Positions 599-22,135 of a stretch of 64,000 nucleotides of DNA are shown piece after piece. The notes beneath the pieces are model-generated. The model saw only the letters and a program-made list of their open reading frames with translations, was not told the DNA's origin and searched no databases. Position 1 is the first letter of the stretch. Each line of letters starts with the position of its first letter. The stretch covers positions 62,001-126,000 of the IMG/VR virus record IMGVR_UViG_3300044641_007115; one strand, given 5' to 3'. Both the position numbers and the translations under genes were made by a program.

Positions 599-1441
599 GT
601 GGATTGGTATCGGATCATTTCTGTTAGGGTTGGTCGTAGGATCTGTCATCTGTTTCTTCTACTACCAGAAATCCTTCAGCAAGAAGTTGAAAGGTCTATC
701 AGTTCGTTTTCGCCGCGACTAAATGTCAGCGTGCAACGAATCGACAGACGAATCAAAGGAACTACGATCAATGAACTCTATGCGCCCTATCGGAACGCAT
801 ACGATCTTCTCGAACCGATAAGAGATAGTAGTCTTCGCCCGACCGGTGTATACGACGCCATCATCGCGGATGGTGGCGTCACCAAGAATGGACGCCGGTA
901 CAGCCGCAAGGACTTCCTCAACGCCCAACGTCTATACTTCTCAAACCAGCCTGTCATTGAAGCGGGACAAGATCCTCTTGGCGTCTGCCTTGCCGATGAA
1001 TTCTACCCGGACGGCACGCTACGACTGGATCGCATGATCGGCCAAGTCATCGACATGAAAGTTGTAGACGCGGACAACAGTTGGTATGTGACCATTCGTT
1101 TCGCCATCCATGACATGACCACGCGCGCGAATCCTTGGTACGAAACCATGCAGCCGATCTTCACCAAGCTGCACGGTCACTACAAAGCGATTCCTAGCGG
1201 AATTGTGCCAGACAACTCCGGGGCTATTGTGAACGAGAATGGGGTGGAAGTGGTGACTGGTTTCATGTTGCGGTCGATCATCTTGTCGTGCAACTCCGCA
1301 TTCGAAAAAGCAAACGCGGTTCAGCCGGTATACATGGACGGTGGAAGGATGTCTGCCACCACAACATCCGCGCGCCCGCCGTTGCCACAGCGCCAAACGT
1401 CAATGCAACGCGGGTCAATCTTCGACCGACGACCGATCTAA
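599..1441 (+). CDS. divergent T4 gp21-like prohead protease paralogue, probably inactive
   Basis: TKNGRRYS, EFYP..TLRLDR and NGVEVVTGFML resemble gp21 NRNGRVY, GELxHP..INLDR and G..xV.DF.L; catalytic His and Ser motifs not evident; start uncertain. Confidence 0.5.
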   Translation: MDWYRIISVRVGRRICHLFLLLPEILQQEVERSISSFSPRLNVSVQRIDRRIKGTTINELYAPYRNAYDLLEPIRDSSLRPTGVYDAIIADGGVTKNGRRYSRKDFLNAQRLYFSNQPVIEAGQDPLGVCLADEFYPDGTLRLDRMIGQVIDMKVVDADNSWYVTIRFAIHDMTTRANPWYETMQPIFTKLHGHYKAIPSGIVPDNSGAIVNENGVEVVTGFMLRSIILSCNSAFEKANAVQPVYMDGGRMSATTTSARPPLPQRQTSMQRGSIFDRRPI

Positions 1442-1596
1442 TACGTGACTGTTGCCGTCAACACAGCGGCGGCTATCCAGTATATCGCCCGGCGATAATC
1501 GCCTGAAGCGTAATACCAAACAGCCGCCGCAATGCTCAATCCAATCTGGATTGTTGGGAAAAGTTTCGGTGTGAAAATGATGTCGCGCCAGTTCAT
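1438..1596 (-). CDS. small membrane protein (52 aa, not in ORF track)
   Basis: manual translation MNWRDIIFTPKLFPTIQIGLSIAAAVWYYASGDYRRAIYWIAAAVLTATVTY; abuts upstream gene. Confidence 0.75.
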   Translation of the reverse strand: MNWRDIIFTPKLFPTIQIGLSIAAAVWYYASGDYRRAIYWIAAAVLTATVTY

Positions 1597-1911
1597 TTAG
1601 ACTGCGATTTTCTTACTCATCGCACTCATAATTTTATCGTAACTAGTGAAGGCATCAATTTCCTTTTCGGTCGCCGGACGGACATTCACCTGACCATCCA
1701 CCTTTTGCACCGTGAAGATTCCGCGCGGGTCCTTAAGTTCGACGACTACCGATTGACGTTCCGCCAAAAGCCGGTGAAGCGCCGCCAACATAATTCGCCC
1801 CGTCGCACCCTGATCCAACGCAACGGAAGGTCCACTGTTTGCACTCATTGTCTGTTCTCCTGTTTGCCCAAATTTGGGGTCACCAGTATACTTAGACACA
1901 CTATTCGACAA
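1597..1911 (-). CDS. hypothetical protein
   Basis: ORF tightly coupled to neighbours in a minus-strand run. Confidence 0.6.
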   Translation of the reverse strand: MSNSVSKYTGDPKFGQTGEQTMSANSGPSVALDQGATGRIMLAALHRLLAERQSVVVELKDPRGIFTVQKVDGQVNVRPATEKEIDAFTSYDKIMSAMSKKIAV

Positions 1912-3100
1912 TCAGGCTCATCAGTGACATAGCCGCACGGGTCGTCCCGGCACGCGAAGAAACATAGAAACCGTACTGGCTCCGGGAACTCAGGAAGTCG
2001 CTGTTGACCACGCTGTTGACATCATGCCAATGCACACCGTTCATGGAGATACGGAAGACCCGATCCGCTCCATCGTCTTGGATCTGGAACCAGATCGGCT
2101 GAGCCACCAGACCATACGATGTCGTGAAATATGTCGAGTCAACTGTTGTTTCGTTCGTCCATTTGGTGCCCACCGCACGCAACCATGTGCTTGATCCGAA
2201 GGATGCGCCATAAGTCACAATCCTGCTGTCCGTGCTGTTCCGAAGGAAGATGCCACACTCAGCGGGCGTAGAACCCGTCAGGTATGGATAGAAGGCCGCT
2301 GTGATCTTCCACGGGGCCGCGCTGAGCGATGCTTGCATCAGACGAAGGTTCTCCGACGCTTCCGCCGCCACGGTGTCGATAAACACTCCACCAAGCGAAC
2401 TGGAAGAAACCGCCGATCCGCCTTGGTTGATCCATGAGAACGATCCAAAATTCGGTGTCTCGAACTTCACCAGCGGGCCGAATGATTCGTAGGCAGAACC
2501 CGTTGACCGACGCAAACCGAAACCGGTGCCGGGCAATACCACGCGGCCAGTATTTCCAGTTGCCGGGGAAGGCGCACTTCCATACGCCGTCACGGAAACT
2601 GGATGATCCCACGACCGGCCCGTTGATCCGTCTGTAGACAGGAACCTACCAGCATTGCCACTGGCAGTCGGTAGAAGAGCCGTCACGTCAATCGCAACAC
2701 TGGACGCTGTGGTGATGATACCCTTGGACGACACCTGAACCTGTGCGACCGTCGTGCCGCTTCCATAAGTCGCGCCCGTGACGCCGGAATCGTTTAGATC
2801 GACCGTCGTCTGGTCGTTGCCAGAATCATCCGTCAGAGCGAACCCGGAAGAGAAATTGATCCGGGAACGCTGAGTGAAGGGTGTACCGGCGCGCCGCAAA
2901 GTCTGATATCGAATATCAGTGATATTGGCGATGGTGTGGGTGTGTCCCTCTTTCGACATGGCAAAACCGCCCACTGTCGAGTTGTCGTGAAGGACAAGTG
3001 TCCATTTTGTAGTGTCAACAGTGATTTCGCCAGCCGCGCCGGTAAAGGCGCTGTGGTTCGCAGTTGTACCGCGTCGAAATTGAATCGTGATGCCAGCCAT
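1901..3100 (-). CDS. tail fibre / receptor-binding protein with Mtd_N-like N-terminus
   Basis: N-terminal IQFRRGTTANHSAFTGAAGEITVDT..LHD..TVGG; Ser/Thr/Gly-rich shaft; beta-rich C-terminal domain. Confidence 0.75.
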   Translation of the reverse strand: MAGITIQFRRGTTANHSAFTGAAGEITVDTTKWTLVLHDNSTVGGFAMSKEGHTHTIANITDIRYQTLRRAGTPFTQRSRINFSSGFALTDDSGNDQTTVDLNDSGVTGATYGSGTTVAQVQVSSKGIITTASSVAIDVTALLPTASGNAGRFLSTDGSTGRSWDHPVSVTAYGSAPSPATGNTGRVVLPGTGFGLRRSTGSAYESFGPLVKFETPNFGSFSWINQGGSAVSSSSLGGVFIDTVAAEASENLRLMQASLSAAPWKITAAFYPYLTGSTPAECGIFLRNSTDSRIVTYGASFGSSTWLRAVGTKWTNETTVDSTYFTTSYGLVAQPIWFQIQDDGADRVFRISMNGVHWHDVNSVVNSDFLSSRSQYGFYVSSRAGTTRAAMSLMSLIVE

Positions 3101-3103
3101 GTC

Positions 3104-3361
3104 TTATCGCTCCGTTTGACCGCCCGCGCCCACAATCGGAGCACGCCGGATCATGAATGCGATGGATTCGTCCAGATCCCATACGCCGGGATGACCGACG
3201 ACCAAAGACTGAAGCACACCATTGATCTGATGTTCAAGAGCATCACGCTCCTTGATCCACCGGCGCAAAAGAGTTTGCACAGCGGGTTGAATCGGAAGCT
3301 GGTCGCCTTGTTCGAGTCGGATTTCGGAAGGGGAGTCTTGGTCAACGAAAATAGGTTCCAT
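3104..3361 (-). CDS. hypothetical protein
   Basis: ORF preceded by late-like TCTAAATT 6 nt upstream of ATG. Confidence 0.55.
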   Translation of the reverse strand: MEPIFVDQDSPSEIRLEQGDQLPIQPAVQTLLRRWIKERDALEHQINGVLQSLVVGHPGVWDLDESIAFMIRRAPIVGAGGQTER

Positions 3362-3413
3362 CACTTCAATTTAGACACCACGGAAATGGCATCTTTTGAA
3401 GTGATGGAACCTA

Positions 3414-3632
3414 TTAGACTGGCAGTTGCGATGGTTCGGTCAATTTGGCTTGACACATCATACACGTGTGCTCAACAGCTTGTTCTTCCGTGAACACACG
3501 GCGATACCGGTCCATCGTCACCGGTTCGCCCTTGTGGTTGTTGAACTTGGCGGGCAGACACTTGAAATGCGTGAAACCGCGTTTGGTCAAAGTGCCCGGA
3601 CCACCCAATTCGTAAACCACATGGTATCTCAT
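3414..3632 (-). CDS. hypothetical protein (leaderless start MRYHVVYELGG)
   Basis: ATG 6 nt after a sigma70 -10 element. Confidence 0.6.
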   Translation of the reverse strand: MRYHVVYELGGPGTLTKRGFTHFKCLPAKFNNHKGEPVTMDRYRRVFTEEQAVEHTCMMCQAKLTEPSQLPV

Positions 3633-3638
3633 GACTCC

Positions 3639-3667
3639 ATCATAATGAATCACAAACTATATGTCAA
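3639..3667 (-). promoter_or_regulatory. sigma70-type early promoter TTGACA-17-TATGAT
   Basis: consensus -35 with the phage TTGACATATAG extension. Confidence 0.75.
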
Positions 3668-3906
3668 GCCCCATTTTGGTTGTTGGTGTCGAACTTGATC
3701 CCGATCAGAACTTCGATGCTTTCGATCTTGTGTTTGATCGTTTGCAATTGTTCCGCTACGGACGCCGCGTCCATTTTCACCCACATCCGGCGCAACAACC
3801 GGAACTGATTGTCAATATCGGCAAACAGTTGATCTGCAACGACTCGATTCTCTTCGACGATGTTCAGAAATTTGTTGTGTGGTAATCCTTTATGCGGCAT
3901 GCGCAT
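3664..3906 (-). CDS. hypothetical coiled-coil protein
   Basis: ORF overlaps the stop of the upstream gene. Confidence 0.55.
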   Translation of the reverse strand: MRMPHKGLPHNKFLNIVEENRVVADQLFADIDNQFRLLRRMWVKMDAASVAEQLQTIKHKIESIEVLIGIKFDTNNQNGA

Positions 3907-4666
3907 CGATCCTCAAATGCTTCCTCAAAATGTACCGGGCCAGATCCCGAATGGCTTGCTTATCTGGTTCATCCGGTAGAGAACTTGCGGAAGCTGCTTC
4001 TTTAGATGCTTCTAACAGCCGCAAGATTTCATCCCGGCCTTGCTCATACGTCCACGCGCCTTCGCGGATGGCCTTCAATTCTTCTGCGTCGATCCCGCGC
4101 CGGTCTACCATCAGCACCGCACCATTGCATGAGAAGAACTCTCCGATCATGCGGGCAAGACGAACGGCGTGGTACATGTACTTCGTATCGAAACCGAACT
4201 TGTCACGGATGGCTTTACGCTTGGCACCCATCCGACCAGTCGCCGGGTTGTCTACACCCATCTTCTCAAGCTGGCGGAAAGCGTATCCGGCGAAACTGTC
4301 GATGGCCCTCTTCGAATTGAAAATGCGACGATTTTCGATGAGCACCTGTCCCAACGGGTCAACATGCTCATATTGAGAAACCCACAACAGAGGGATCACG
4401 TTGGGATTGAAATTTTGACAGAGACGCATGAACTTCGTGAGTTCATATGACGTTTCTTCCGACAACAAATTGCCGTCTTCGTCTTTCTCTTTTTTCTCCA
4501 TCGTGCCCTGCGATCCAAACCAGTCGAGTGACAGGTAAACTTGATCGGATGCGGCGACGACTTCCATGAAATCTGTGTCGGATTCCGGTGTCGATGTGCC
4601 ATAAGCATGACTACCGACTTGCGCTCTGATTAGGGTCCTTTCTGGAATTAACTGTGGAACTTGCAT
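3890..4666 (-). CDS. Pol-beta superfamily nucleotidyltransferase (RlaP/YcgL-like)
   Basis: GSHAYGTSTPESDTD motif, NPN, K.MYHAVRL, SSLP..PD. Confidence 0.85.
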   Translation of the reverse strand: MQVPQLIPERTLIRAQVGSHAYGTSTPESDTDFMEVVAASDQVYLSLDWFGSQGTMEKKEKDEDGNLLSEETSYELTKFMRLCQNFNPNVIPLLWVSQYEHVDPLGQVLIENRRIFNSKRAIDSFAGYAFRQLEKMGVDNPATGRMGAKRKAIRDKFGFDTKYMYHAVRLARMIGEFFSCNGAVLMVDRRGIDAEELKAIREGAWTYEQGRDEILRLLEASKEAASASSLPDEPDKQAIRDLARYILRKHLRIDAHAA

Positions 4667-4704
4667 GGGAATATCGAACTAGAGTCCGTATAAACAATCA
4701 TCAC

Positions 4705-5214
4705 ATGGCAAAGAAAACACAACTTTCCTTTTACAAGGTCAATCCCAACGCGGAAGCGCCCGCCTATGGAACCCAAGACTCTGCATGCTTCGATTTCAAA
4801 GCGTGTCTCATCGGTGAACGAGTAAGAGGGTTCGACCGCAACAACAAGGAATTCATCACACCGCTCAGCAACAAAATCGTCATCAATCCCGGCGAACGTG
4901 TTCTGGTCCCGACTGGTTTGATTCTTGACATCCCGGAAGGGTATTCTGTCCGTCTGCACGCCCGTTCCGGGTTGAGTCTCAAGCAAGGTCTGGTCTTAGC
5001 CAATGCGGAAGGCGTCATCGATAGTGACTATGTTGATCCCACGTTCATCATGATTACGAACATGTCCACGGTAATGGCTGACATCAAACACGGCGACCGT
5101 ATCGCACAAGGAGAATTGGTTCCCGTCTACCCGGCAGAGTTCAAGGAAATCAAAGAAGCACCCGGCAAGAAAACTGACCGACAAGGCGGTCTTGGGTCAA
5201 CCGGCGTCAAGTAG
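4705..5214 (+). CDS. dut: trimeric dUTPase
   Basis: motifs ACFD, RSGL, GVIDSDY, RIAQG, RQGGLGSTG. Confidence 0.95.
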   Translation: MAKKTQLSFYKVNPNAEAPAYGTQDSACFDFKACLIGERVRGFDRNNKEFITPLSNKIVINPGERVLVPTGLILDIPEGYSVRLHARSGLSLKQGLVLANAEGVIDSDYVDPTFIMITNMSTVMADIKHGDRIAQGELVPVYPAEFKEIKEAPGKKTDRQGGLGSTGVK

Positions 5215-5220
5215 CCCCGG

Positions 5221-5249
5221 TTGACATATAAGTCGTTCTGTGCTATAAT
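5221..5249 (+). promoter_or_regulatory. perfect sigma70 promoter TTGACA-17-TGnTATAAT, leaderless
   Basis: exact consensus; ATG at 5255. Confidence 0.9.
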
Positions 5250-5254
5250 GGGAT

Positions 5255-5734
5255 ATGCGCCATCTCATCCAGCCCAATTCTAGGACTTGCGGACAAACAT
5301 GCGTTGCGATGGCGGCTGGTATTGACATAGAAGCCGCCATCAAGCTGTTTGGTCACAAACACGGCACCAGCACGCGAAGCATGGTCCGTGTCCTACGTCA
5401 CCTTGGATTCAAACCGGCGGCATGTTTACAAAGGATCACTCCCGACCGGCCCATGCCGAAACGGTCCATTTGCAAGATGCGTTTCCGCCGCCGGGATGGG
5501 CGTGGATGGAAATCCGGGTGGCATTGGGTTCTGATATGGGACGGCGTGTTGTACGATCCGCTTGGTCCTGACTTCGAACACAAAGGGCAGTTCCAACTTT
5601 CCTCATTCTTGGATCTGACCCATCGTACAATAGAGAAGAATGAACTGGAACACAACAAATCTATGGAAGGTCACGTTCGCAACCATCGGCGTCGGCATCT
5701 TCCTGAATGCGATGCACTGGCCGAAAGTCGGTGA
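5255..5734 (+). CDS. C39-like cysteine peptidase
   Basis: Q..TCGQTCVAM, HWVL, YDP. Confidence 0.7.
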   Translation: MRHLIQPNSRTCGQTCVAMAAGIDIEAAIKLFGHKHGTSTRSMVRVLRHLGFKPAACLQRITPDRPMPKRSICKMRFRRRDGRGWKSGWHWVLIWDGVLYDPLGPDFEHKGQFQLSSFLDLTHRTIEKNELEHNKSMEGHVRNHRRRHLPECDALAESR

Positions 5735-5828
5735 ATTCATCGGCATCATCGGCGGCATTGCTTTCATCATAATGTGCTGTGCCCGTTTCGAAGACGTGCA
5801 AAAATTTCTGGACAGAAACAACAAATAG
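5640..5828 (+). CDS. small two-helix membrane protein
   Basis: two hydrophobic segments; overlaps the tail of the previous ORF. Confidence 0.55.
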   Translation: MNWNTTNLWKVTFATIGVGIFLNAMHWPKVGEFIGIIGGIAFIIMCCARFEDVQKFLDRNNK

Positions 5829-5880
5829 CGTCTATATACCTTTCGGATGCCGCATGGCGGGTCCATAGGAGATAGAAACA

Positions 5881-6312: not shown

Positions 6313-6317
6313 CCCTT

Positions 6318-9368: not shown

Positions 9369-9680
9369 TCAGGCTACGGTCCAGACATCCCGCTGATGGT
9401 AGTAATTGCCAATCGCGGACAGAACCGGAGTCAATTCCTTCCGAAGTGATGAAAGATTTACCGACTCCCGGACATCCAGTGTTACGTCCACGATAGCGAT
9501 CTGTGATGTCGTTGGACTCCGATCAATCCACGGGCCGGGCACACGGAACTTCCGTCGAACGAAATTTCCATACCCCCGGTCAAACTTTCCGATGTAGACA
9601 GTCGCATACGGATCAGTCGGTTTTGAAAGAACTGGAATCGCCGCGACGATTGGCAGAGCGAACAATTGCCGTCGTGTCAT
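9369..9680 (-). CDS. hypothetical protein with twin-arginine-like signal (MTRRQLFAL)
   Basis: true start likely 9680, 5 nt after TCTAAGTA. Confidence 0.55.
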   Translation of the reverse strand: MTRRQLFALPIVAAIPVLSKPTDPYATVYIGKFDRGYGNFVRRKFRVPGPWIDRSPTTSQIAIVDVTLDVRESVNLSSLRKELTPVLSAIGNYYHQRDVWTVA

Positions 9681-9907: not shown

Positions 9908-11566
9908 TTAGGCGGTCGTGACTTCCGTTTCGTCTTCCGATCCCGAACGGCGGCTGGTGCCACCGCGCATGAAATCGGCCAACAGAACCGGCACGTTGGC
10001 GTCGAAACCAACGAAGTCCATCATACCCATATCCTTCGGATCGGCGATGGAGAACGGCGTCGCCGCCGTTGCGATGACGGCCAGCTTCGCGTTCGGCTTA
10101 TTCCGTTCCTTGCGGTACTTCACAAGCGCTTGCGACGGCTGGATGCTACCGGCCCAAGTTTCGTTGTCCGTGATTACCGTGAAGCAATCGACGTTCAAGT
10201 TGTTCTTGATGCCGTAGATCATCGGCAACGAACAATCCGTACCGCCGCCAAGACCGCGATTCGCCTTCTTCGTTGCCGATTCCAGCGTATCCTTGGCAGT
10301 GATCTTGAGATCGACGAACTGCGTGTCGAACCCACGGATGTCGTAGTTCTGTTCCGTGCGGATGAATACCATCGCTTGCGCGGCGGCAATCATCGCGTGG
10401 GTCAGAGCCGTACCATTCCAACTCATCGTCATCGAACCCGAAAGGTCGATGCCCACCAAAAGGTTCTGTCCGGTCGGCTCCACGTTGGCGAAGGTTCCGT
10501 AGAACGCATCCATCAACGCATCGACAACCGCCGGAACCACCGTCCACGAACCGTTACCACGCTGACCGTGACCGGCACCATAGGTACCGTAGGCCAGCAA
10601 CACCTGAAGCGGGTGGACCCGCGACCGGCGCAAGTATTCGGCATCGCGCAACCGGCTGGCGACCAGCTTGGAAGCATCAGACAGCGGGGCCAACAGGCCA
10701 GACTTCGACATGTTGCCCAAGTTGCGGATCATCGCAGTCAGCGGCATCTTTTGCAAGAGCGCTTCCTGAACCGTCGCGTCGTTGAGGAACTGAGTCGGAA
10801 TCATTTCGCGCGTCAAACCGTAGTCGGACACGATCTTGATGACTTCCTTGGCCGAAGTTGCCTTCTTTGCCAACTCAACGCCGTCGATCACGCGGGACAC
10901 GTCCGGCTTGTACTCACCCTTGGCCGCGTAACGGTAGATCGCGGAGCGAACTTCGTCTTCCGGCTTCGGGTGCGCCAAACGGAGAATGTCGCGCTGTGCC
11001 CATCCTTCACGCTGTTGGTACTTCGCCAACTGGTAGGCCAGATCGCGGGGCGACTTGGCAGAATACCAGTCCTTCACAGCACGGGCCAGAACAGCACCCC
11101 AACCGCGAAGCGAAGTTGCGTAGGAAATGAACGAAAACAGATGCGTGCCCGTGCGCGCGACCACCGGCAACTTGGACGCCGCGTACTGGCGCGTCTCAAT
11201 GACCGGGGAGTCGGTCGGGGACATGGCAAGTGCCAGCGCAAACAACGCCGGATCGTTCTTCGGTGCCCGGCCCGCGTCGCTGATGCCAGCGATCACATCG
11301 ACCGTGCGCTTACCGTCTTCCTTCAGACAGGCGATCACGTTCTTCGCGTGTTCGCGGGTCAGCTTTTCCGCCGAACCACCACTTGCGTAGTAGGCCGGGT
11401 TCTCAGACCCAAGGATCAGGAAGCGCTCCAAGAGCGTCCACTTATCGACGGTGAAAACGAATCCACCGTGGGCGTTCTGCGCCATTTCATTCTCACGTCC
11501 CGGAATCGGCTGATTCTGCGGGGTCGTCTTCCGGCTTGCGCCGTGCAAGCTATAGATGTTTGCCAT
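9908..11566 (-). CDS. rsr: Ro60 / TROVE-domain RNA-binding protein (Rsr orthologue)
   Basis: NAHGGFVF, LERFLILGSE, RTGTHLF, KYQQREGW, ALIRNLG-like AMIRNLG, RVHP, vWA DLSGSM, GGTDCSLPM, ITDNETW, DFVGFDA; start M8 after AAGAGG. Confidence 0.95.
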   Translation of the reverse strand: MANIYSLHGASRKTTPQNQPIPGRENEMAQNAHGGFVFTVDKWTLLERFLILGSENPAYYASGGSAEKLTREHAKNVIACLKEDGKRTVDVIAGISDAGRAPKNDPALFALALAMSPTDSPVIETRQYAASKLPVVARTGTHLFSFISYATSLRGWGAVLARAVKDWYSAKSPRDLAYQLAKYQQREGWAQRDILRLAHPKPEDEVRSAIYRYAAKGEYKPDVSRVIDGVELAKKATSAKEVIKIVSDYGLTREMIPTQFLNDATVQEALLQKMPLTAMIRNLGNMSKSGLLAPLSDASKLVASRLRDAEYLRRSRVHPLQVLLAYGTYGAGHGQRGNGSWTVVPAVVDALMDAFYGTFANVEPTGQNLLVGIDLSGSMTMSWNGTALTHAMIAAAQAMVFIRTEQNYDIRGFDTQFVDLKITAKDTLESATKKANRGLGGGTDCSLPMIYGIKNNLNVDCFTVITDNETWAGSIQPSQALVKYRKERNKPNAKLAVIATAATPFSIADPKDMGMMDFVGFDANVPVLLADFMRGGTSRRSGSEDETEVTTA

Positions 11567-11604
11567 GTTATTTTGACCTCTTTTCAAACACTACACCGTG
11601 TTAA

Positions 11605-14474: not shown

Positions 14475-14879
14475 TTACCTACTGGTAGTGCTGACTTCGG
14501 AAAACGAGATCGGTGGTGTGTGCTCGAAATCGTAATCCATCACTTCATCATGAGCAATCATCGCCATTCGGTAGTGATGCCGATCTTTGTGCATGATGAT
14601 GCGAATGATGATATTGTCATCGCTGAAATTCGGCAAGCAATCGACAAGGAACCCATCCACGATATTCTTTTCTTTCGCAACGTTCAGAACCGGCGTCAAT
14701 GCCATCTTGAGTTGCGAACAGGAAAAATTGTCTGTGAATAGACCTAGTTGAGCCGCCCGCTGAACCACACCAAATAGATTGTCGCGCAAACCATTCAGGT
14801 CATTGAACCCGGATGGTATGGGCCACATTTCTTCGGTATCAGCACCGACAACTACATCATTTGATAATCGAAATGCCAT
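14475..14879 (-). CDS. protein resembling the C-terminal domain of T4 gp18 tail sheath
   Basis: AAQLGLF..F..SQL...LTPVL....IVDGFLVDC parallels gp18 AA...LFE.ND.FTR..F...V.P.L...GI.DF.VVC. Confidence 0.45.
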   Translation of the reverse strand: MAFRLSNDVVVGADTEEMWPIPSGFNDLNGLRDNLFGVVQRAAQLGLFTDNFSCSQLKMALTPVLNVAKEKNIVDGFLVDCLPNFSDDNIIIRIIMHKDRHHYRMAMIAHDEVMDYDFEHTPPISFSEVSTTSR

Positions 14880-16292: not shown

Positions 16293-16847
16293 ATGCCAAT
16301 GGACACTACAGCCGAACAACTCATCGGCATCATCAAACGCCAGCCTTCGAACCCCAACTTTTTGAATGCTCATCGTTTTCGGATGGTTCTTCATCGCACG
16401 CCGTCGATGATCTACTTCATGCAAGAAGTCAACCTTCCGGGAATTTCCACTGGTGCGCCGATTCAACCAACGCCGTTTGTGGACATCCCGCATCACGGCG
16501 ACAAGCTGGTGTTTGAAGATTTGACGGTGAGTTTCGCTATCGATGAGGACATGAAGAATTACAGGGAAATCCAACAGTGGTTGTATGGATTGACCTTTCC
16601 GCAACGGTTCGAACAACATGCCGATCTTGTGCAAGGAATGCATAACCGGTACTCCGATATTCTACTGGTGATCCTCAACAGCAACTACAATCCACAACAC
16701 TACGTCATGTTCCGTCAGGCGTGGCCGTCTTCGCTTGGATCGATCCAGTTCAATTCGAAGGATCAGGACGTGGTTGTACAGCCGGTTTCTGTCACATTCA
16801 AGTATGCGTATTATGAATTTTTGGATATCGGCGACGTGTCATCATAA
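16293..16847 (+). CDS. gp3: tail completion / sheath stabiliser (T4 gp3-like)
   Basis: NFL...F...QEVNLPGIS, GDKL.FEDL..F.IDEDMKNY; position upstream of uvsY. Confidence 0.85.
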   Translation: MPMDTTAEQLIGIIKRQPSNPNFLNAHRFRMVLHRTPSMIYFMQEVNLPGISTGAPIQPTPFVDIPHHGDKLVFEDLTVSFAIDEDMKNYREIQQWLYGLTFPQRFEQHADLVQGMHNRYSDILLVILNSNYNPQHYVMFRQAWPSSLGSIQFNSKDQDVVVQPVSVTFKYAYYEFLDIGDVSS

Positions 16848-17459: not shown

Positions 17460-17467
17460 ACACGAAC

Positions 17468-17938
17468 ATGGTACTGGAAGACTACGCGGCTCTGGCAGAC
17501 AAAGAGCTTCGGATTGATGTGACGCGGCTTGTCGAAGAAGCCGCGTCCATCGCCTATCTCCACGGTCGGTGGATGAAGTTCTACGAAGAAGAGAAGAGGC
17601 AATTCCGCCGGATGAAGCGGGAAGTCGCCAAGATGTACACGAAGCGGTTCAACTTCTATCGCGGCACCGGCGACCCTGATGATTTTCCGAATGAGCGCCC
17701 GCCGGATTTGATTCTCGATACATCCATGAAGACCGGCACGAAGAAGCGTAGCCATACGCCGGTCAACGTGGTCGAAATGTACATGGAATCCGACGATCTG
17801 TATCAGGACATGAAAGACAAGCTGGAAGATCAAGAAGTTCTTTTGGACTATCTCGAACAATGTCTCAAGGGTATTGCCTTCCGCCGGAACCAGATCGATA
17901 CCATCAACGAAACCCGCAAGTTCGAGTTTGGAAGGTGA
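17468..17938 (+). CDS. uvsY: recombination mediator UvsY
   Basis: size, FY.G motif, C-terminal R..QI...I...KF..G; synteny with uvsW. Confidence 0.85.
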   Translation: MVLEDYAALADKELRIDVTRLVEEAASIAYLHGRWMKFYEEEKRQFRRMKREVAKMYTKRFNFYRGTGDPDDFPNERPPDLILDTSMKTGTKKRSHTPVNVVEMYMESDDLYQDMKDKLEDQEVLLDYLEQCLKGIAFRRNQIDTINETRKFEFGR

Positions 17939-18035
17939 GCATGGGTGGATTGTTCAAATCAGTGACGGGCTTACAGTGTTGGGGATTGATGTTCTTCTCT
18001 TTTTGCATGGGATTATTGGTAGCGAAGGTGTTTTC

Positions 18036-18251
18036 ATGAGTGCATTCTATTTCCACTTCAACAAACCAGCCACACAGCGCGCCGGGAAAGTGCAAGTCAG
18101 TCTGCACTACAAAGACACTTGTCATGTGATCGATAACATTGACTGTCGCGTGCCCGTGCGCGGGCGCATACGCAAGACTCAACCCCGGTTTGTCATGGCC
18201 GGGAAAGCGAAGTCCGTTCGCTTTGAAGATGGCGTGGCGGTGATCGAATGA
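18036..18251 (+). CDS. hypothetical phage protein
   Basis: MSAFYFHFNKP...QPRFVMAGKA; overlaps the next start. Confidence 0.7.
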   Translation: MSAFYFHFNKPATQRAGKVQVSLHYKDTCHVIDNIDCRVPVRGRIRKTQPRFVMAGKAKSVRFEDGVAVIE

Positions 18252-18571
18252 AAGTCTACCAAGACCCGGTATACCGGTTCAATTTCGACAAGATGACCCG
18301 CCGGGACATGTGGGCCTTTTTGTTGATGCTGGTGACGGCTCCGTCGCTGGCCGTTCAAGCGTGGAAGATGTACAAGGCACCGAAGACGGTTGCCAGTGCA
18401 TTGATGGTTGGCTACAAAGGAACAACTCCATTTGAAGCCGGTTTCTTCTATGCGCCATACATTCCGCTGCAAATGGTTTCGCCCATTCCTACGACAAAAC
18501 CGCCGGTGGCGTTCAAAACTCGATACGGAACATATTCAGGTTCGAGTTACTATAGAAAGGTACAGCTATGA
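18248..18571 (+). CDS. mini-protein carrying a T4 gp23 major-capsid C-terminal segment behind a Tat/TM-like leader
   Basis: VGYKG.TPFEAGFFYAPYIPLQMV...P.VAFKTRYG is the gp23 C-terminal signature. Confidence 0.75.
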   Translation: MKVYQDPVYRFNFDKMTRRDMWAFLLMLVTAPSLAVQAWKMYKAPKTVASALMVGYKGTTPFEAGFFYAPYIPLQMVSPIPTTKPPVAFKTRYGTYSGSSYYRKVQL

Positions 18572-18831
18572 AGAAACTGTTTCTGATTCCTCTTCTTATC
18601 CTTGCCGGGTGCGCCACGACTCCCATGCAAACCCTCTCTACCAACAACCCGGAGTTGCAGATCGATGTTGTCGGTAAAGCGGATGGATGTACCATATATC
18701 GTTTTCGCGACGCCGGTAAGAACCACTATTTTGTCAAGTGTATCGAAGGCACCGCGCAAGCCATGTCGATGCAATCATGCGGTAAGAATTGTCAGTATGA
18801 GGATCGCATTCAGACCGTAACCACGCACTAG
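18568..18831 (+). CDS. small lipoprotein
   Basis: MKKLFLIPLLILAGC lipobox; DGC.IYRF.D. Confidence 0.75.
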   Translation: MKKLFLIPLLILAGCATTPMQTLSTNNPELQIDVVGKADGCTIYRFRDAGKNHYFVKCIEGTAQAMSMQSCGKNCQYEDRIQTVTTH

Positions 18832-18874
18832 ATCCCGCGTCTAGTGCTCAAAATGGCCGCGTATAAACACATGC

Positions 18875-20392
18875 GTGGTCGTCATTCGCAAAGTCAACGA
18901 ATCCTATCTTCAGGTTGACGCCGATCCCGGAATCGTTCGAGAGATCAGCGAAGTTCTAACCTTCGAAGTCCCGAACGCACATCACATGCGCCGCATGATG
19001 GAGAAGCGCGGGCGCAAGATGTACAACAATTGGGATGGGCGCATCAAGCTGTTGGACTATCGCAACGGCGCGGCCTATCTTGGTCTTCACCGTTTCATTC
19101 GTCAGTACTGCGAAGAGAACAACTATGAAGTCCAGTACGAAGACAACTTCGATTCAGAAAACCCTTTCTCCCTGTGGGAAGCCCGTAAGTTCTTCGAGTC
19201 ACTAAACCTGTCTGTACAGGGTAAACCGCTGGATGTGCGCGACTACCAAGAGCGTGCATTTGTTCACGGGGTTCAGCGCCGCCGGGCCATTCTCGTTTCT
19301 CCCACGGCGTCCGGCAAGTCGCTCATCATCTATCTTCTGTTGCGGTATCTGCAAGAGTACAAGATGGGAGACACGGGGAAAATTCTTGTCATTGTTCCCA
19401 CGACATCGCTGGTCGAACAGATGTACTCCGACTTCGCCGATTACAGCGCGGCGGACCCGAATTGGAATGTCGAAGAGAATGTCCATCGCGTCCACTCCGG
19501 GGCGGAACGAAACACCGATCTTCCAATCACTGTGACGACGTGGCAGTCCATTTATCGGATGAACGATGAGTGGTTTTTACAATTCCACGGGGTTGTCGGT
19601 GACGAAGCCCATCAGTTTGACTCCAAATCGCTCAGCAAGATTATGTCGTCGCTGGTGAACGCGGAGTATCGTTTCGCCACGACCGGCACATTGAAGGGAT
19701 CGATGGTCAATGAAATGGTGTTGGAAGGTCTGTTCGGTCAGGTCTACAACGTCACCACGACCCGCGAACTCATGGATGCTGGTACGGTCGCGGATCTGAC
19801 AATCAAAGCGCTGGTGCTCCGTTACTCCGATGAAGATTGTCAAATGGTCCGGGGTGCCGACTTCCATGCGGAGCGGGACTACATTTCCGCACACACGACC
19901 CGCCGGAACTTTGTGCGCAATCTGGTGTTGAGCCTGAAAGGAAACACGCTGGTTCTTTTCGCTCTTGTCGATAAGCAGGGGAAGCCGCTGTATGAGTCGA
20001 TCATGGAGCGGGTGGAACCGGGCCGAAAGGTCTTCTATGTCTCCGGTGAGACGGAAGCCGATGACCGGGAACAGGTGCGTCAGATCACGGAACAGGAAGA
20101 GAACGCCATCATCATTGCCAGCTACGGCGTCTTTTCGACCGGTGTCAATATCCGCAATCTGGACAATCTGGTATTCGCCGCCGGGACGAAATCGAAGATC
20201 CGTACCCTACAAAGCATCGGTCGCGGCCTTCGGAAAAGTGATCGGAAATCCACGGTGACGGTCTTCGACATCGTGGATGATTTGAGCGTTAAGTCTAAGA
20301 AAAATTTCGCCTTAATGCATTTCGCCGAACGCTTGGCGTTCTATGCGGCGGAACAGTTCCGGTACAAGATTTACCGGATCGACCTGTCGTAA
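18875..20392 (+). CDS. uvsW: SF2 DNA/RNA helicase UvsW
   Basis: WDGRIKL, SPTASGKS, DEAH, QSIGRGLR. Confidence 0.95.
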   Translation: MVVIRKVNESYLQVDADPGIVREISEVLTFEVPNAHHMRRMMEKRGRKMYNNWDGRIKLLDYRNGAAYLGLHRFIRQYCEENNYEVQYEDNFDSENPFSLWEARKFFESLNLSVQGKPLDVRDYQERAFVHGVQRRRAILVSPTASGKSLIIYLLLRYLQEYKMGDTGKILVIVPTTSLVEQMYSDFADYSAADPNWNVEENVHRVHSGAERNTDLPITVTTWQSIYRMNDEWFLQFHGVVGDEAHQFDSKSLSKIMSSLVNAEYRFATTGTLKGSMVNEMVLEGLFGQVYNVTTTRELMDAGTVADLTIKALVLRYSDEDCQMVRGADFHAERDYISAHTTRRNFVRNLVLSLKGNTLVLFALVDKQGKPLYESIMERVEPGRKVFYVSGETEADDREQVRQITEQEENAIIIASYGVFSTGVNIRNLDNLVFAAGTKSKIRTLQSIGRGLRKSDRKSTVTVFDIVDDLSVKSKKNFALMHFAERLAFYAAEQFRYKIYRIDLS

Positions 20393-20393
20393 G

Positions 20394-20401
20394 TATAAAT
20401 A
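20394..20401 (+). promoter_or_regulatory. T4 late promoter TATAAATA
   Basis: exact T4 gp55 consensus. Confidence 0.7.
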
Positions 20402-20504
20402 CGGGGATTGTCGTCGCATTTGGAAGGGTGCGGCGAATTCTCTTGGTGAAACGAGTTTTTCAGTGCGACATCGCGCGCTGATAATGGAAGTTAGGTCGGT
20501 GTGT

Positions 20505-20636
20505 CTAGTACCCGAAATGAGCTTTGATAAGGTTCATCACCAAGATGAACCATGCAATGCCAACGACGGACATCAAGATCCATCCGGCGAACAAAGCTAT
20601 CGCGATCTTCAAAGTGAATCGCAGAAAGGATAACAT
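20505..20636 (-). CDS. 43-aa membrane peptide (not in ORF track)
   Basis: MLSFLRFTLKIAIALFAGWILMSVVGIAWFILVMNLIKAHFGY; own sigma70 promoter. Confidence 0.65.
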   Translation of the reverse strand: MLSFLRFTLKIAIALFAGWILMSVVGIAWFILVMNLIKAHFGY

Positions 20637-20644
20637 ATGCTTCA

Positions 20645-20673
20645 AGCATAACAGGGATGGACATATAAGTCAA
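20645..20673 (-). promoter_or_regulatory. sigma70 promoter TTGACT-17-TGnTATGCT overlapping the gp55 start
   Basis: spacing and extended -10. Confidence 0.7.
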
Positions 20674-21251
20674 TGGAGCGCAAGAAAAATCAGTACGTGG
20701 ACAACAAGAAGCTGTACGATGCCCTAGTCGAATGGCTGAAGGACCGGAAGGCGGCACAACGCAATAAGCAAAACCTCCCTCCGCTCCCCGACTATATTGG
20801 TGAGTGTATCTTGTTGATGGCAAACCGTTTGGCTCAAAAAGCCAACTTCGTCAACTACACTTTCAAAGATGACATGATCGGCGATGCGATGGAATCGTGT
20901 TTGCGGTATCTGCACAATTTCAACCCGACGCGGAGCACCAACGCTTTTGCCTATGTGACACAGATCCTTCACAATGCGTTTGTGCGCCGGATTCAGCGGG
21001 AACGGCGGAACAGCTATACCAAGGCGATGTTGATTAGCCACGGTATGCCGGGGTATTCGGTGCAAGAAGGCGACGAAACGGAATACACCAACACCTACGT
21101 CGATTTCCTTCAAGAGAATGTCACCGACGTGATTGAAAAGTTCGAGTCCGCCAAGAAACGGAAGAAGGACCGGCAACAGAAGAAGTTGGGTCTGGAAAGT
21201 TTCTTCGTGGAAGAACCAACCGAACAAGTAGTCGGGGCCGGTTCACAGTAA
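20673..21251 (+). CDS. gp55: late-transcription sigma factor gp55
   Basis: YVDNK, YIGEC, NF.NYT...DMI.D, NAFAY.TQI..NAF.RRIQ.E. Confidence 0.95.
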   Translation: MERKKNQYVDNKKLYDALVEWLKDRKAAQRNKQNLPPLPDYIGECILLMANRLAQKANFVNYTFKDDMIGDAMESCLRYLHNFNPTRSTNAFAYVTQILHNAFVRRIQRERRNSYTKAMLISHGMPGYSVQEGDETEYTNTYVDFLQENVTDVIEKFESAKKRKKDRQQKKLGLESFFVEEPTEQVVGAGSQ

Positions 21252-21272
21252 GAACAATTTTGGTGCGGTAGG

Positions 21273-21311
21273 AAAAGGCGGGATGTGCGCTCCATCCCGC
21301 CTTTTTCTTTT
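21273..21311 (+). terminator. intrinsic terminator
   Basis: aaaaggcgggatg / catcccgcctttttctttt. Confidence 0.9.
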
Positions 21312-21335
21312 GCTCAAAACATACATAGAGTGTGT

Positions 21336-21677
21336 ATGGCCGTTGAAACTGTTTCGACGATGATAGGGTACGATCTTCGGGATCACCGGTGGGTAGCATT
21401 TTGTCCGCACTACGATCTGGACGCGCACGACACGACAATTGAATCTAGTTGGGACCGGCTAGTCGATTTGTGCAACGGGTGGGTCGAATGGTGCCTTCTG
21501 CAAGGATTGCCGGAATTGAGCGAAACACACGCGCCTTATCTCAATGTGATTGAAGAGTCGATCAAAGAACCATATGCGACGGTGGAACTGGCCGGGTTGA
21601 GCATCGAAATGACCGGCTGGCTGATTCTGGATCGGTTGCCGGGTAATTGGCAACAGGGACGAATTCTGGACGCCTAA
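21336..21677 (+). CDS. HicB-like protein
   Basis: W.AFCP.YDL.A..TTIE.....L pattern of the HicB N-domain. Confidence 0.5.
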   Translation: MAVETVSTMIGYDLRDHRWVAFCPHYDLDAHDTTIESSWDRLVDLCNGWVEWCLLQGLPELSETHAPYLNVIEESIKEPYATVELAGLSIEMTGWLILDRLPGNWQQGRILDA

Positions 21678-21685
21678 ATGGATGT

Positions 21686-22135
21686 ATGAGTAAGAAATCA
21701 GGGGCGGCAACCGCCGCCAAAAACGAATACATCCCTCTTGACAAATTCCGTTTGGAGTTCACCAGCATTCCCGGTGTGAAGGAATTGGCTGGTATCAGTC
21801 AAAGTGTCCGACAAGTTAATCTGCCCGGCGGTGAACGTGGTAAGTCGAACACGATGATCTGTGATTCGATGACTGTGACTTTCGTAGAGACGACGGATTT
21901 GAATTTCGTCAAGTTCGTCTCATGGCTCCAAACATCATCCGGTGATCTGGCGACCGCGAAGTTGTACATTCAGAATCAATCGGAAAAAGACGTACTGTGT
22001 GTGTCTATGGAAGGCATGGAGATCACACAGGTGTGTAGTGTTAGCCTTGGCAATTCGGCCTTGATCGGAACGACTGGCAATATGGAATTTGATGTTGTGT
22101 TCCGTGTCGGACGGACCAATTACACCGTCCTCTAA
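21686..22135 (+). CDS. divergent tail tube/gp3-fold paralogue
   Basis: F.L.F..IP, V.QVNLPG, MTVTF, A.L.I.N, FDV.F. Confidence 0.5.
   Translation: MSKKSGAATAAKNEYIPLDKFRLEFTSIPGVKELAGISQSVRQVNLPGGERGKSNTMICDSMTVTFVETTDLNFVKFVSWLQTSSGDLATAKLYIQNQSEKDVLCVSMEGMEITQVCSVSLGNSALIGTTGNMEFDVVFRVGRTNYTVL

What the first reader, a model, noticed from the sequence alone, without database searches (positions are those of the whole stretch)
599..22135. A set of degenerate structural-protein paralogues (protease, sheath, capsid, tube): possible decoy arsenal
Seen: four dispersed ORFs each resemble part of a T4 virion or assembly protein: 599-1441 (gp21), 14475-14879 (gp18 C-domain), 18248-18571 (gp23 C-terminus) and 21686-22135 (tube/gp3 fold). 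All lie outside a morphogenesis cluster and all are open reading frames. Established: prohead protease, tail tube and capsid proteins are known triggers of CBASS, DSR2 and CapRel respectively. Inference: a systematic strategy of expressing non-functional mimics of the phage's own immune triggers. Except for the gp23 piece, the homologies are by-eye.
Basis: inference. Interest (0 to 1): 0.75.

Follow-up and report, generated by a model that had tools for sequence, protein, structure and literature searches.

The report
Exported copies of phage head-protein pieces
All four flagged genes of this lake-water T4-like phage do resemble virion proteins, but they are not one decoy set: one is probably an ordinary tail part, two are odd extra paralogues, and the capsid piece belongs to an unusual trio of small genes that join an export-type leader to a copied capsid or portal contact surface.

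Summary
The window lies in a 224-kb T4-like phage from lake water. Full-length sheath, tube, portal, protease, scaffold and capsid genes sit in one cluster outside it. All four by-eye resemblances hold at fold or sequence level, but they are unlike things.
- ORF 14475-14879 has the gp25 / sheath-handshake fold, is gp25-sized and strongly constrained, and is the only gp25 candidate found. It is probably the sheath initiator.
- ORF 21686-22135 has a tail-tube fold, but it is an extra copy in an insertion slot and changes amino acids six times faster than its neighbours.
- ORF 731-1441 has the prohead-protease fold without the canonical His/Ser pair.
- ORF 18248-18571 is a real 63%-identical copy of the phage's own capsid C-terminus behind a twin-arginine-type hydrophobic leader.

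Two more genes outside the window share that design: a second capsid piece and a portal clip-domain piece. All three copy protein contact surfaces, are under purifying selection, and are lost or truncated in close relatives. No cultured phage has them. The decoy idea is untested and fits poorly with the predicted export. The leader-plus-fragment trio looks new.

The parts
731..1441 (+). The canonical catalytic His and Ser are not conserved.
   Evidence: Family of 8 homologues at 44-93% identity. AF2 model core pLDDT ~70. Best match T4 gp21 5JBL, then herpesvirus assemblins; BFVD prohead proteases; Atlas S78/S77 feature hits. Anchored on the shared NGRxY motif, gp21 GELN-H-P falls on xxD/E-P and gp21 GV-S-SRG falls on a variable position. 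CTAAATG lies 12 nt upstream.
9369..9680 (-). Fourth small ORF with the same type of leader (MTRRQLFALPIVAAIPVL...). The origin of its C-terminal ~80 aa is unknown.
   Evidence: Leader scan. The BLAST hit to a 605-aa protein was judged spurious. No hit in phages. Found only in the same phage. CTAAGTA lies 12 nt upstream.
14475..14879 (-). ORF2: 134-aa protein with the gp25 / sheath C-terminal 'handshake' fold (two helices plus a four-stranded sheet). Probable sheath initiator.
   Evidence: AF2 pLDDT 77.5, core ~90. Atlas, PDB and VIA matches to the sheath C-domain, a baseplate-cup chain and T4 gp25. No Pfam GPW_gp25, Sheath_initiator or Baseplate_J hit anywhere in the genome. No gp25 in the gp53-gp4-gp2-gp48-hub region. 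omega 0.065 against L018. 85% identical in L017-L019.
16293..16847 (+). gp3 orthologue (tail completion / sheath stabiliser), a tube-fold core gene.
   Evidence: 36-42% identical to cyanophage gp3. Weak Pfam gp19 hit. CTTAAATA upstream.
17468..17938 (+). uvsY, first gene of the block that contains the gp23 piece.
   Evidence: The L007 homologue carries Pfam UvsY. 98% identical in L018. CTAAACA lies 12 nt upstream.
18039..18251 (+). Unannotated 70-aa ORF whose stop overlaps the start of the gp23 piece (ATGA).
   Evidence: Read from the alignment. 73% identical but truncated in L017-L019.
18248..18571 (+). gp23 piece ('mini-gp23a'), 107 aa. It has a short N-terminal stretch, a twin-arginine-type hydrophobic leader (residues 16-39, window 18293-18364) and a copy of the phage's own MCP residues 369-444 (core at window 18401-18538).
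   Evidence: Family of 6 full-length homologues at 52-97% identity. Conserved slot between uvsY and uvsW. pN 0.20-0.29 against saturated pS. Absent in L017-L019 except for a 66-nt inverted remnant. Identical in independent lake metagenome contigs.
18568..18831 (+). 87-aa lipoprotein (MKKLFLIPLLILAGC...), overlapping the stop of the gp23 piece.
   Evidence: Sequence. Retained at 64% identity in L017-L019, which lack the gp23 piece.
18875..20392 (+). uvsW helicase
   Evidence: Pfam UvsW_N, DEAD and ResIII on the L007 and L009 homologues. 97% identical in L018.
20673..21251 (+). gp55 late sigma factor
   Evidence: 46% identical to the cyanophage Bellamy late transcription sigma factor.
21285..21677 (+). 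130-aa ORF of unknown function. With ORF4 it fills a slot between gp55 and gp47 that is empty in cyanophage Bellamy.
21686..22135 (+). ORF4: 149-aa tail-tube-fold protein, an extra paralogue that evolves fast.
   Evidence: Atlas TM 0.74-0.81 to tube clusters. No Pfam, PHROG or tblastn hit. Tiny family. omega 0.38 against 0.063 for the flanking gp55 and gp47 at the same dS of 1.07. 51-52% identical where the neighbours are 83-92%. CTAAATG lies 12 nt upstream.
22361..23524 (+). gp47 recombination nuclease subunit (context)
   Evidence: Metallophos on the homologues; gene order as in Bellamy.

Best explanation
The four ORFs are four different things, not one system.

(1) ORF 14475-14879 is most likely the phage's own highly diverged gp25-type sheath initiator, a normal baseplate part whose fold is by nature the same as the sheath C-terminal domain.

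(2) ORF 21686-22135 is a fourth tail-tube-fold protein besides gp19, gp3 and a gp48-like protein. It sits in an insertion slot and changes amino acids about six times faster than its neighbours. I read it as a lineage-specific tail or accessory protein of unknown role.

(3) ORF 731-1441 is a conserved protein with the prohead-protease fold that has lost the canonical His/Ser pair. It is probably a non-catalytic head-assembly or internal head protein (inferred).

(4) ORF 18248-18571 is a real gene born from a copy of the C-terminal P-domain part of the phage's own major capsid protein, joined to a twin-arginine-type hydrophobic leader.

ORF 18248-18571 is one of three such genes in this genome. 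A second copies the capsid P-domain strand and acidic helix. The third copies the portal clip domain behind a lipoprotein-type leader. Shown: the copies, the leaders as sequence features, purifying selection, and gain and loss among relatives. Inferred: the leader sends these small proteins into or across the inner membrane, where they act as accessory envelope-associated factors of the kind phages keep in variable slots, and they keep the ability to bind whatever the copied contact surface binds.
For: Genome inventory.
ORF2: fold; no other gp25; omega 0.065.
ORF4: fold; slot empty in cyanophage Bellamy; omega 0.38 at the same dS as its neighbours.
ORF1: fold; catalytic positions not conserved.
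gp23 piece.
Trio: leader scan; second MCP piece with Pfam Gp23 at 35 bits and 49% identity to own MCP 190-228; portal piece 34% identical to own portal 255-317 and hitting annotated portals in 6 phage records.
Selection: omega 0.17 and 0.12.
Loss or truncation in relatives.
No cultured phage has a full-length counterpart, and the MCP-derived part is closest to the phage's own MCP (63% against 48% at most).
By my arithmetic, all 3 head-fragment ORFs fall among the only 4 RR-leader ORFs of about 313 genes, p about 8e-7.
Interface mapping.
Against: - No expression or localisation data; no RNA run holds the phage.
- The Tat label is motif-level only. Pfam TAT_signal and NCBIfam models do not fire.
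- The ORF2 fold matches are of middling strength, and pantothenate-synthetase C-domains score similarly. ORF2 is not in a baseplate gene cluster.
- The ORF1 catalytic-residue call rests on a motif-anchored alignment at about 13% identity and a model with mean pLDDT 55. The family keeps an invariant His148 and Ser189 that could form another active site.
- If the copied motifs were merely recycled sequence, there is no obvious reason for the invariant residues of the mini-gp23 family to coincide with the MCP's own conserved residues.
Confidence: 0.55

Rival explanations
1. The phage expresses non-functional mimics of its own immune triggers (protease, sheath, capsid, tube) to titrate host sensors such as CBASS, DSR2, CapRel or Avs.
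For: ORF1 lacks the catalytic pair. ORF4 is an extra copy with a raised omega, as expected in an arms race. The true fragment genes copy the most conserved MCP and portal motifs and come and go among relatives, as anti-defence genes do. Capsid, portal and tube proteins are documented sensor targets (SpbK-YonE).
Against: ORF2 is under core-gene-level constraint and is the only gp25 candidate. ORF1, ORF2 and ORF4 share no detectable sequence with the phage's own gp21, gp18 or gp19, so a sensor tuned to those proteins need not see them. The fragment genes carry export-type leaders, while the named sensors are cytoplasmic. Avs sensors recognise folded cores, not 40-75-aa pieces. There is no functional data.
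Confidence: 0.12
2. The three fragment genes are interface-mimic inhibitors. By presenting the capsid inter-capsomer contact elements and the portal clip, they bind MCP, terminase or neck proteins and disturb head assembly or DNA packaging. The target would be co-infecting related phages, or the phage's own assembly as a timing device. The leader keeps them membrane-bound or removes them.
For: The portal piece covers the T4 gp20 clip tip region. A 24-aa peptide of gp20 residues 288-311 binds gp17 and inhibits packaging (PMC4493910; mapping). The second MCP piece covers the basic strand and acidic helix that make capsomer-capsomer contacts, where head-length mutations map (PMC9958956; mapping). 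The residues conserved in the mini-gp23 family are the MCP's own conserved residues. A satellite-encoded TerL inhibitor is a precedent.
Against: The predicted topology (RR on the N-terminal side) puts the copied part outside the cytoplasm. They would also poison the phage's own assembly.
Confidence: 0.18
3. The gp23 piece and its relatives are decaying remnants of recombination or duplication with no function.
For: They are short and mosaic: different MCP pieces are arranged differently in L007 and in the window. They sit in variable slots and are deleted or truncated in close relatives.
Against: Open frames are kept over 52-97% identity. omega is 0.12-0.17, and pN is 0.2-0.29 against saturated pS. 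The leader is conserved. The rival opposite-strand frame is broken in a relative.
Confidence: 0.05
4. The gp23 piece and the following lipoprotein form a two-component spanin (an inner-membrane type II protein plus an outer-membrane lipoprotein) for lysis.
For: Adjacent, overlapping genes: a leader/anchor protein followed by a lipoprotein.
Against: L017-L019 keep the lipoprotein (64% identical) but have lost the gp23 piece. The periplasmic part is a beta-rich capsid fragment, not a coiled coil.
Confidence: 0.03

Closest known systems
T4 gp25 (sheath polymerisation initiator) and its relation to the gp18 C-terminal domain
   Same: ORF2 is 134 aa (T4 gp25 is 132 aa, from knowledge). It has two helices and a four-stranded sheet that match T4 gp25, a phage baseplate-cup chain and tail-sheath C-terminal domains.
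   Different: It has no sequence-level match to GPW_gp25 or Sheath_initiator. It lies among small unknown genes near a Ro60-like gene, not in a baseplate cluster.
T4 tube-fold paralogues gp19, gp3, gp48 and gp54
   Same: ORF4 has the tube fold, and the genome also has gp19, gp3 and a gp48-like protein.
   Different: ORF4 is not detectable by the gp19 HMM. It sits in a slot that is empty in a cyanophage and has omega 0.38 against 0.063 for its neighbours, which is unlike a core tube-initiator.
T4 gp21 / HK97-type prohead proteases and herpesvirus assemblins
   Same: ORF1 shares the fold (Z 8.5 to 5JBL, 140 residues aligned), an N-terminal NGRxY motif and a disordered C-terminal tail.
   Different: The canonical His and Ser positions are not conserved. 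It has no S77 or S78 HMM hit, and it lies far from the head cluster, next to an Mtd_N tail-fibre-like gene.
Small exported phage accessory proteins (T4 Sp and Imm, T5 Llp; from knowledge)
   Same: They are about 80-110 aa with a signal or lipoprotein leader. They sit in variable slots between core genes and are dispensable among relatives.
   Different: None of those is known to be built from a fragment of the phage's own capsid or portal protein.
The gp20 288-311 peptide that binds terminase gp17 and blocks T4 DNA packaging (cited in PMC4493910), and the satellite TerL inhibitor Gpi (bioRxiv 10.1101/2024.04.22.590561)
   Same: The portal piece copies the same clip region. This would be a natural analogue of a packaging-motor binder.
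   Different: The T4 peptide is a laboratory reagent and Gpi is unrelated in sequence. Here the piece is a phage gene with a lipoprotein-type leader, and binding is untested.

Membership tests
Major capsid protein Gp23 (PF07068), for ORF 18248-18571 | Significant match to the family profile | tested here: met
   46.8 bits against a cut-off of 24.4, E 3.8e-12; phrog_138 major head protein at 7.7e-11.
Major capsid protein Gp23 (PF07068), for ORF 18248-18571 | Complete HK97-type capsid fold (whole profile covered) | tested here: not met
   Only profile positions 291-353 of 376 are covered, equal to own MCP residues 369-444. It is a fragment, not a capsid protein.
Prohead protease S77/S78 (assemblin fold), for ORF1 | Assemblin fold | tested here: met
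   5JBL is the top match (probability 0.99-1.0, Z 8.5), followed by 17 herpesvirus protease entries and 87 BFVD hits. The model is only moderate (pLDDT 55, core ~70).
Prohead protease S77/S78 (assemblin fold), for ORF1 | Catalytic His and Ser at the canonical positions | tested here: not met
   Anchored on NGRxY, the His of GELNHP falls on D/E and the Ser of GVSSRG falls on a position that varies S/Q/C/T. The alignment is at very low identity, so this is provisional.
Prohead protease S77/S78 (assemblin fold), for ORF1 | Family profile match | tested here: not met
   No Pfam hit for any of the 8 family members. S77 matches only the true gp21. hhalign probability 0.1.
gp25 / sheath initiator (PF04965, PF10934), for ORF2 | Family profile match | tested here: not met
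   No match in any frame of the genome at E up to 1.
gp25 / sheath initiator (PF04965, PF10934), for ORF2 | Single-domain protein of about 130 aa with the handshake fold shared with the sheath C-domain | tested here: met
   The Z and TM values are middling.
gp25 / sheath initiator (PF04965, PF10934), for ORF2 | Component of the baseplate that starts sheath polymerisation | not testable with these tools
   Needs virion proteomics or cryo-EM.
Tail sheath C-terminal domain (PF17482) as a copy of gp18, for ORF2 | Sequence similarity to the phage's own sheath | tested here: not met
   BLASTP found nothing. PF17482 matches only gp18.
T4 gp19 tail-tube family (PF06841 / PF23849), for ORF4 | Family profile match | tested here: not met
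   hhalign to own gp19 and gp3 is not significant.
T4 gp19 tail-tube family (PF06841 / PF23849), for ORF4 | Tube fold | tested here: met
   TM 0.74-0.81 by query to six tube-family clusters; Atlas model pTM 0.78.
Twin-arginine (Tat) signal peptides, for the leaders of the fragment genes | S/T-R-R-x-hydrophobic-hydrophobic motif, an uncharged h-region, and an AxA or lipobox end | tested here: met
   TRRDMW...AVQA, TRRGLF...AKA, TRRNLF...TTGC, and NRRSFF...SVGC in L030.
Twin-arginine (Tat) signal peptides, for the leaders of the fragment genes | Recognition by a curated signal model | tested here: not met
   Pfam and NCBIfam gave no TAT_signal hit. Short models are easily filtered out, so this is weak evidence.
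Twin-arginine (Tat) signal peptides, for the leaders of the fragment genes | Tat-dependent export | not testable with these tools
   Needs reporter fusions in wild-type and tat-deficient laboratory strains.
Anti-defence decoy of an immune trigger | Binds or blocks a host sensor of the mimicked protein | not testable with these tools
Two-component spanin (gp23 piece plus lipoprotein) | Both partners kept together | tested here: not met
   L017-L019 keep the lipoprotein and lack the gp23 piece.

The most novel reading that the evidence does not exclude
This phage lineage keeps a dedicated set of leader-tagged mimic peptides cut from the contact surfaces of its own head machinery: the capsid P-domain (two pieces) and the portal clip that docks terminase and neck. 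It may also keep a catalytically dead protease-fold protein and a fast-evolving extra tube-fold protein for the same purpose. These would titrate host sensors of conserved virion motifs, or the assembly and packaging partners of competing phages. That would be a mimicry-based counter-defence or competition strategy not described so far.
Probability: 0.2. Interest if true: 0.85.

Novelty: new variant of a known kind. Interest (0 to 1): 0.58.

Why it matters
If the leader-plus-fragment genes are functional mimics, they would show a simple evolutionary route. A phage copies a 40-75-residue contact surface of its own capsid or portal, adds a targeting leader, and gains a new accessory factor. They would also give natural, ready-made probes for capsomer-capsomer contacts and for the portal-terminase docking site. 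Independently, the work shows that highly diverged T4-like phages hide core parts (gp25) and extra paralogues (tube fold, dead protease fold) that only structure comparison reveals. This is a caution for both annotation and 'decoy' claims.

Tried and rejected
- Megablast of the region against cultured phages found no match.
- BLASTP and hhalign of ORF1 against own gp21, ORF2 against own sheath, and ORF4 against own gp19 and gp3 found nothing significant.
- PDB sequence searches with the ORF1 and ORF4 family profiles found nothing.
- Pfam on all 8 ORF1 family members found nothing.
- The apparent similarity of the fourth leader ORF (9369-9680) to a 605-aa protein runs through its pre-start region with many gaps, so I rejected it as noise. 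tblastn of its C-terminal part against phages found no match even at E of 1.
- The strict T4 late promoter TATAAATA has only 4 sites, which is chance level. It was replaced by the empirically derived NTAAATA.
- Curated Tat-signal models did not fire.
- RNA evidence: no RNA run holds this phage. The read-laying run was therefore spent on DNA runs, which only confirm that the locus is real.
- The spanin reading was rejected because the partners are not co-conserved.
- The 'ORF4 is simply the standard fourth tube gene' reading was downgraded after the cyanophage gene-order comparison and the dN/dS result.

Full report
CONTEXT. The window is bases 62001-126000 of a 224,490-bp virus record that is about 96% complete. 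GC content is about 52%. The phage is a distant T4-like phage. Its major capsid protein (MCP) is at most 59% identical to any cultured phage, and the nearest are Pelagibacter, Methylophilales, Stenotrophomonas and cyanobacterial T4-like phages. The same DNA is present, identical, in 156-kb and 132-kb contigs of independent lake-water metagenome runs, so the locus is not an assembly artefact. A head and tail cluster outside the window encodes sheath gp18 (genome 148172-150502), tube gp19 (151810-152352), portal gp20 (153397-155325), protease gp21 (157710-158372), scaffold gp22 and MCP gp23 (159899-161233), all with strong Pfam matches.

THE OBSERVATION. All four ORFs exist. Only the gp23 piece is recognisable by sequence (Pfam Gp23 E 3.8e-12; PHROG major head protein). 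The other three have no Pfam or PHROG hit and no BLAST or profile similarity to the phage's own gp21, gp18 or gp19. Structure comparison nevertheless bears out each by-eye call; details are given per ORF below.

ORF2 (14475-14879). Only two small homologues exist among 1.84 billion representative proteins. The AF2 model is confident in its core (pLDDT about 90) and shows two helices followed by a four-stranded antiparallel sheet. Its best matches are:
- a Phage_sheath_1C cluster (TM 0.61/0.69, rmsd 2.5 A), with Mu GP46, Sheath_initiator/GPW_gp25 and TssC clusters also listed;
- tail sheath Lin1278 (Z 8.7), a 135-aa phage baseplate-cup chain (Z 7.9), T4 gp25 (Z 6.6) and an R-type bacteriocin sheath (Z 6.5).
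This is the handshake fold that gp25 and the sheath C-domain share (established knowledge). The scores are middling, and pantothenate-synthetase C-domains score similarly. The genome has no GPW_gp25, Sheath_initiator or Baseplate_J profile match in any frame. The recognisable gp53-gp4-gp2-gp48-hub region contains no gp25 candidate. ORF2 is under the same constraint as gp47 and gp55 (omega 0.065 against 0.063) and is kept at 85% identity in a related lineage. The simplest reading is that ORF2 is the phage's own gp25, not a sheath decoy.

ORF4 (21686-22135). The Atlas model (pTM 0.78) matches six tail-tube clusters at TM 0.74-0.81. Profiles detect three other tube-fold genes: gp19, gp3 (window 16293-16847, 36-42% identical to cyanophage gp3) and a 289-aa gp48-like protein. 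I first read ORF4 as the fourth member that T4 also has, but two results argue against a plain core role. In the annotated cyanophage Bellamy, gp55 is followed directly by gp47, so ORF4 and the 130-aa ORF before it fill an insertion slot. Against relative L009, ORF4 has dN 0.405 at dS 1.07 (omega 0.38), while the flanking gp55 and gp47 have omega 0.063 at the same dS. That means faster amino-acid change and not mosaic replacement. Its sequence family is tiny, and no cultured phage has a homologue. Its role is open.

ORF1 (731-1441). It has a family of eight proteins of 223-240 aa at 44-93% identity. The AF2 model is moderate (mean pLDDT 55, core about 70). The best solved match is T4 gp21 (5JBL; Foldseek probability 0.99-1.0; VIA Z 8.5 over 140 residues), followed by 17 herpesvirus assemblin entries. 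87 viral models match at E below 0.001, many of them named prohead protease, and the Atlas feature hits agree. The 5JBL chain carries Ala where the phage's own gp21 has the His of GELNHP and the first Ser of GVSSRG, which marks the catalytic pair. When the alignment is anchored on the shared NGRxY motif, these positions are Asp/Glu and a variable S/Q/C/T position in the ORF1 family. So this is a protease-fold protein without the canonical dyad. The call is provisional, because identity is about 13% and the family keeps an invariant His148 and Ser189. It ends in a disordered tail with a conserved ...SIFDRRxI end and has a conserved Mtd_N tail-fibre-like neighbour.

THE gp23 PIECE. The 107-aa product has three parts: about 15 residues at the N-terminus, then KMTRRDMWAFLLMLVTAPSLAVQAWK, then a copy of own MCP residues 369-444 that is 63% identical over the core and alignable to the MCP's last residues. 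Six full-length homologues at 52-97% identity exist in metagenomes, always between uvsY and uvsW. Twenty of the family's invariant residues are also identical in the MCP. pN is 0.20-0.29 against saturated pS. The capsid-derived part is closer to the phage's own MCP (63%) than to any of 788 other MCPs (48% at most), and no cultured phage has a full-length counterpart. In the close relatives L017-L019 (UvsY 98%, gp3 97% identical) the gene is gone apart from a 66-nt inverted remnant, while the downstream lipoprotein stays. This rules out a spanin pair and shows the gene is accessory.

A TRIO. A six-frame screen of the genome for fragments of long proteins found two more:
- MCP residues 190-228 are copied at genome 211455-211571 (49% identical; Pfam Gp23 at 35 bits, above the cut-off).
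- Portal residues 255-317 are copied at genome 35310-35507 on the minus strand (34% over 67 aa). Portal_T4 is below its cut-off but hits the same profile positions in two homologues, and the piece independently hits annotated portal genes in six phage records.
Both ORFs start with the same kind of leader: MKFTRRGLFGLIAGAVTGTTTAKA and MTRRNLFAVIAGAFAFSTTGC, and in relative L030 MNRRSFFAVIAGVFSSVGC, which is a lipoprotein-type end. A scan for RR plus an uncharged hydrophobic run with a nearby start codon finds only four plausible genes in the genome. They are these three and window 9369-9680, whose C-terminal part has no detectable source. By my arithmetic, the chance that the three head-fragment ORFs all fall among four leader ORFs of about 313 genes is about 8e-7. 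Both extra genes are under purifying selection (omega 0.17 and 0.12). The second MCP piece is kept at 77% identity in the lineage that lost the first. The portal piece is truncated before its portal-like half in L031 and L032. Curated Tat-signal models do not fire, so 'Tat-type' is a motif-level inference.

WHAT WAS COPIED. Alignment to solved T4 proteins places each fragment as follows:
- The portal piece falls at about gp20 residues 276-338. [quoted passage not shown] A 24-residue peptide of gp20 288-311 binds gp17 and inhibits packaging (PMC4493910).
- The second MCP piece falls at about gp23 residues 252-290. This covers the basic strand and the short acidic P-domain helix (including A275) that make capsomer-capsomer contacts near the quasi-threefold axes, where head-length mutations cluster (PMC9958956).
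- The window's piece falls at about gp23 residues 434-521. By HK97-fold topology this is the C-terminal P-domain strands (from knowledge, not verified here).
All three are therefore protein-protein contact elements.

EXPRESSION. Known late genes share NTAAATA. For CTAAATA, 21 of 25 sites lie within 100 nt upstream of a same-strand start, against 2.2 of 12.3 for composition-matched 7-mers. One-off variants at a fixed spacing of 12-13 nt precede ORF1 and ORF4 (CTAAATG), the portal piece (CTAAACT), the fourth leader ORF (CTAAGTA) and uvsY (CTAAACA). This suggests late-type transcription but does not prove it. No RNA run holds the phage.

INTERPRETATION. ORF2 is best explained as an ordinary, very diverged gp25. 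ORF1 and ORF4 are real oddities of unknown role: a dead-looking protease fold and an extra, fast-evolving tube fold. The gp23 piece is a true copy and belongs to a trio of leader-plus-interface-fragment genes. I commit, at moderate confidence, to these being membrane- or periplasm-targeted accessory proteins born from head-gene fragments that retain the binding properties of the copied surface. An immune-decoy role is not excluded, but it conflicts with the predicted export. An interface-mimic role against assembly or packaging partners is the most interesting rival. Full-text searches found no description of such genes. Portals and capsids are known sensor targets, and a satellite TerL inhibitor is known.

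LIMITS. The host, expression and localisation are all unknown. The structural models come from shallow alignments. The ORF1 active-site call is provisional. Statements about T4 gp25 size, HK97 topology, Sp, Imm and Llp, and CapRel, DSR2 and CBASS triggers rest on general knowledge, not on tests here.

Noticed in passing
genome 211335-211586 (+), outside the window; locus L003:1456-1707: Second leader-plus-MCP-fragment gene (MKFTRRGLF... plus a copy of MCP 190-228). Pfam Gp23 is above its cut-off, relatives keep it at 77% identity, and omega is 0.17.
   Followed up: yes
genome 35304-35591 (-), outside the window; locus L005:2304-2591: Lipoprotein-type leader plus a copy of the portal clip region (own portal residues 255-317). 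L030 has a 72% homologue, and the gene is truncated in L031 and L032. It is flanked by another signal-anchor ORF, a ClpP-like gene (genome 35953-36546) and a small ORF with an anti-sigma-like zinc motif (34932-35135).
   Followed up: partly
window 9369-9680 (-): Fourth ORF with the same MTRRxLF-type leader. No source was found for its C-terminal 80 aa. It occurs only in this phage and a near-identical contig.
   Followed up: partly
L017-L019 (for example L018:6001-6066): In close relatives the mini-gp23 gene is replaced by a 66-nt remnant of its 5' end, inverted relative to uvsY and uvsW and next to a GC-rich hairpin-like sequence (GCCCGTGCGCGGGC). An extra 88-aa ORF is present there.
   Followed up: partly
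L007:10001-10318 against window 18248-18571: The mini-gp23 genes are mosaics. L007's copy carries an extra stretch resembling MCP 340-358 after the FKTRYG motif. The window's copy has a KVYQDPVYRF stretch (compare MCP KVFVDPYF) before the leader.
   Followed up: partly
whole genome; for example window 31683-31694 and 47971-47977: The phage's late promoter appears to be NTAAATA (CTAAATA, GTAAATA or ATAAATA), often only 12-16 nt from the start codon and often overlapping the stop codon of the upstream gene. The T4 consensus TATAAATA is not used.
   Followed up: yes
window 9908-11587 (-): 559-aa Ro60/TROVE-type RNA-binding protein (phrog_850; TROVE and vWA_Ro60 on the L007 homologue). I did not look for a partner Y-RNA-like gene.
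   Followed up: no
window 1901-3100 (-) and genome 14238-15884: Two proteins share an Mtd_N (major tropism determinant N-terminal) domain. I did not look for a diversity-generating retroelement.
   Followed up: no
window 48003-50264 (+) and genome 36582-37067 (-): A 753-aa protein with several internal repeats of about 55 aa, and a 161-aa paralogue of its N-terminus. Both lie behind exact CTAAATA late promoters.
   Followed up: no
genome 24974-29086 (+): 1370-aa protein with Peptidase_M23 and glucosaminidase domains, next to the baseplate hub and the gp48-like gene. It is probably the cell-puncturing or tape-measure-type protein.
   Followed up: no
window 18039-18251 (+): A 70-aa ORF between uvsY and the gp23 piece that my own codon-usage gene call did not pick. 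It is coupled to the gp23 piece by an ATGA overlap and is truncated in L017-L019.
   Followed up: partly
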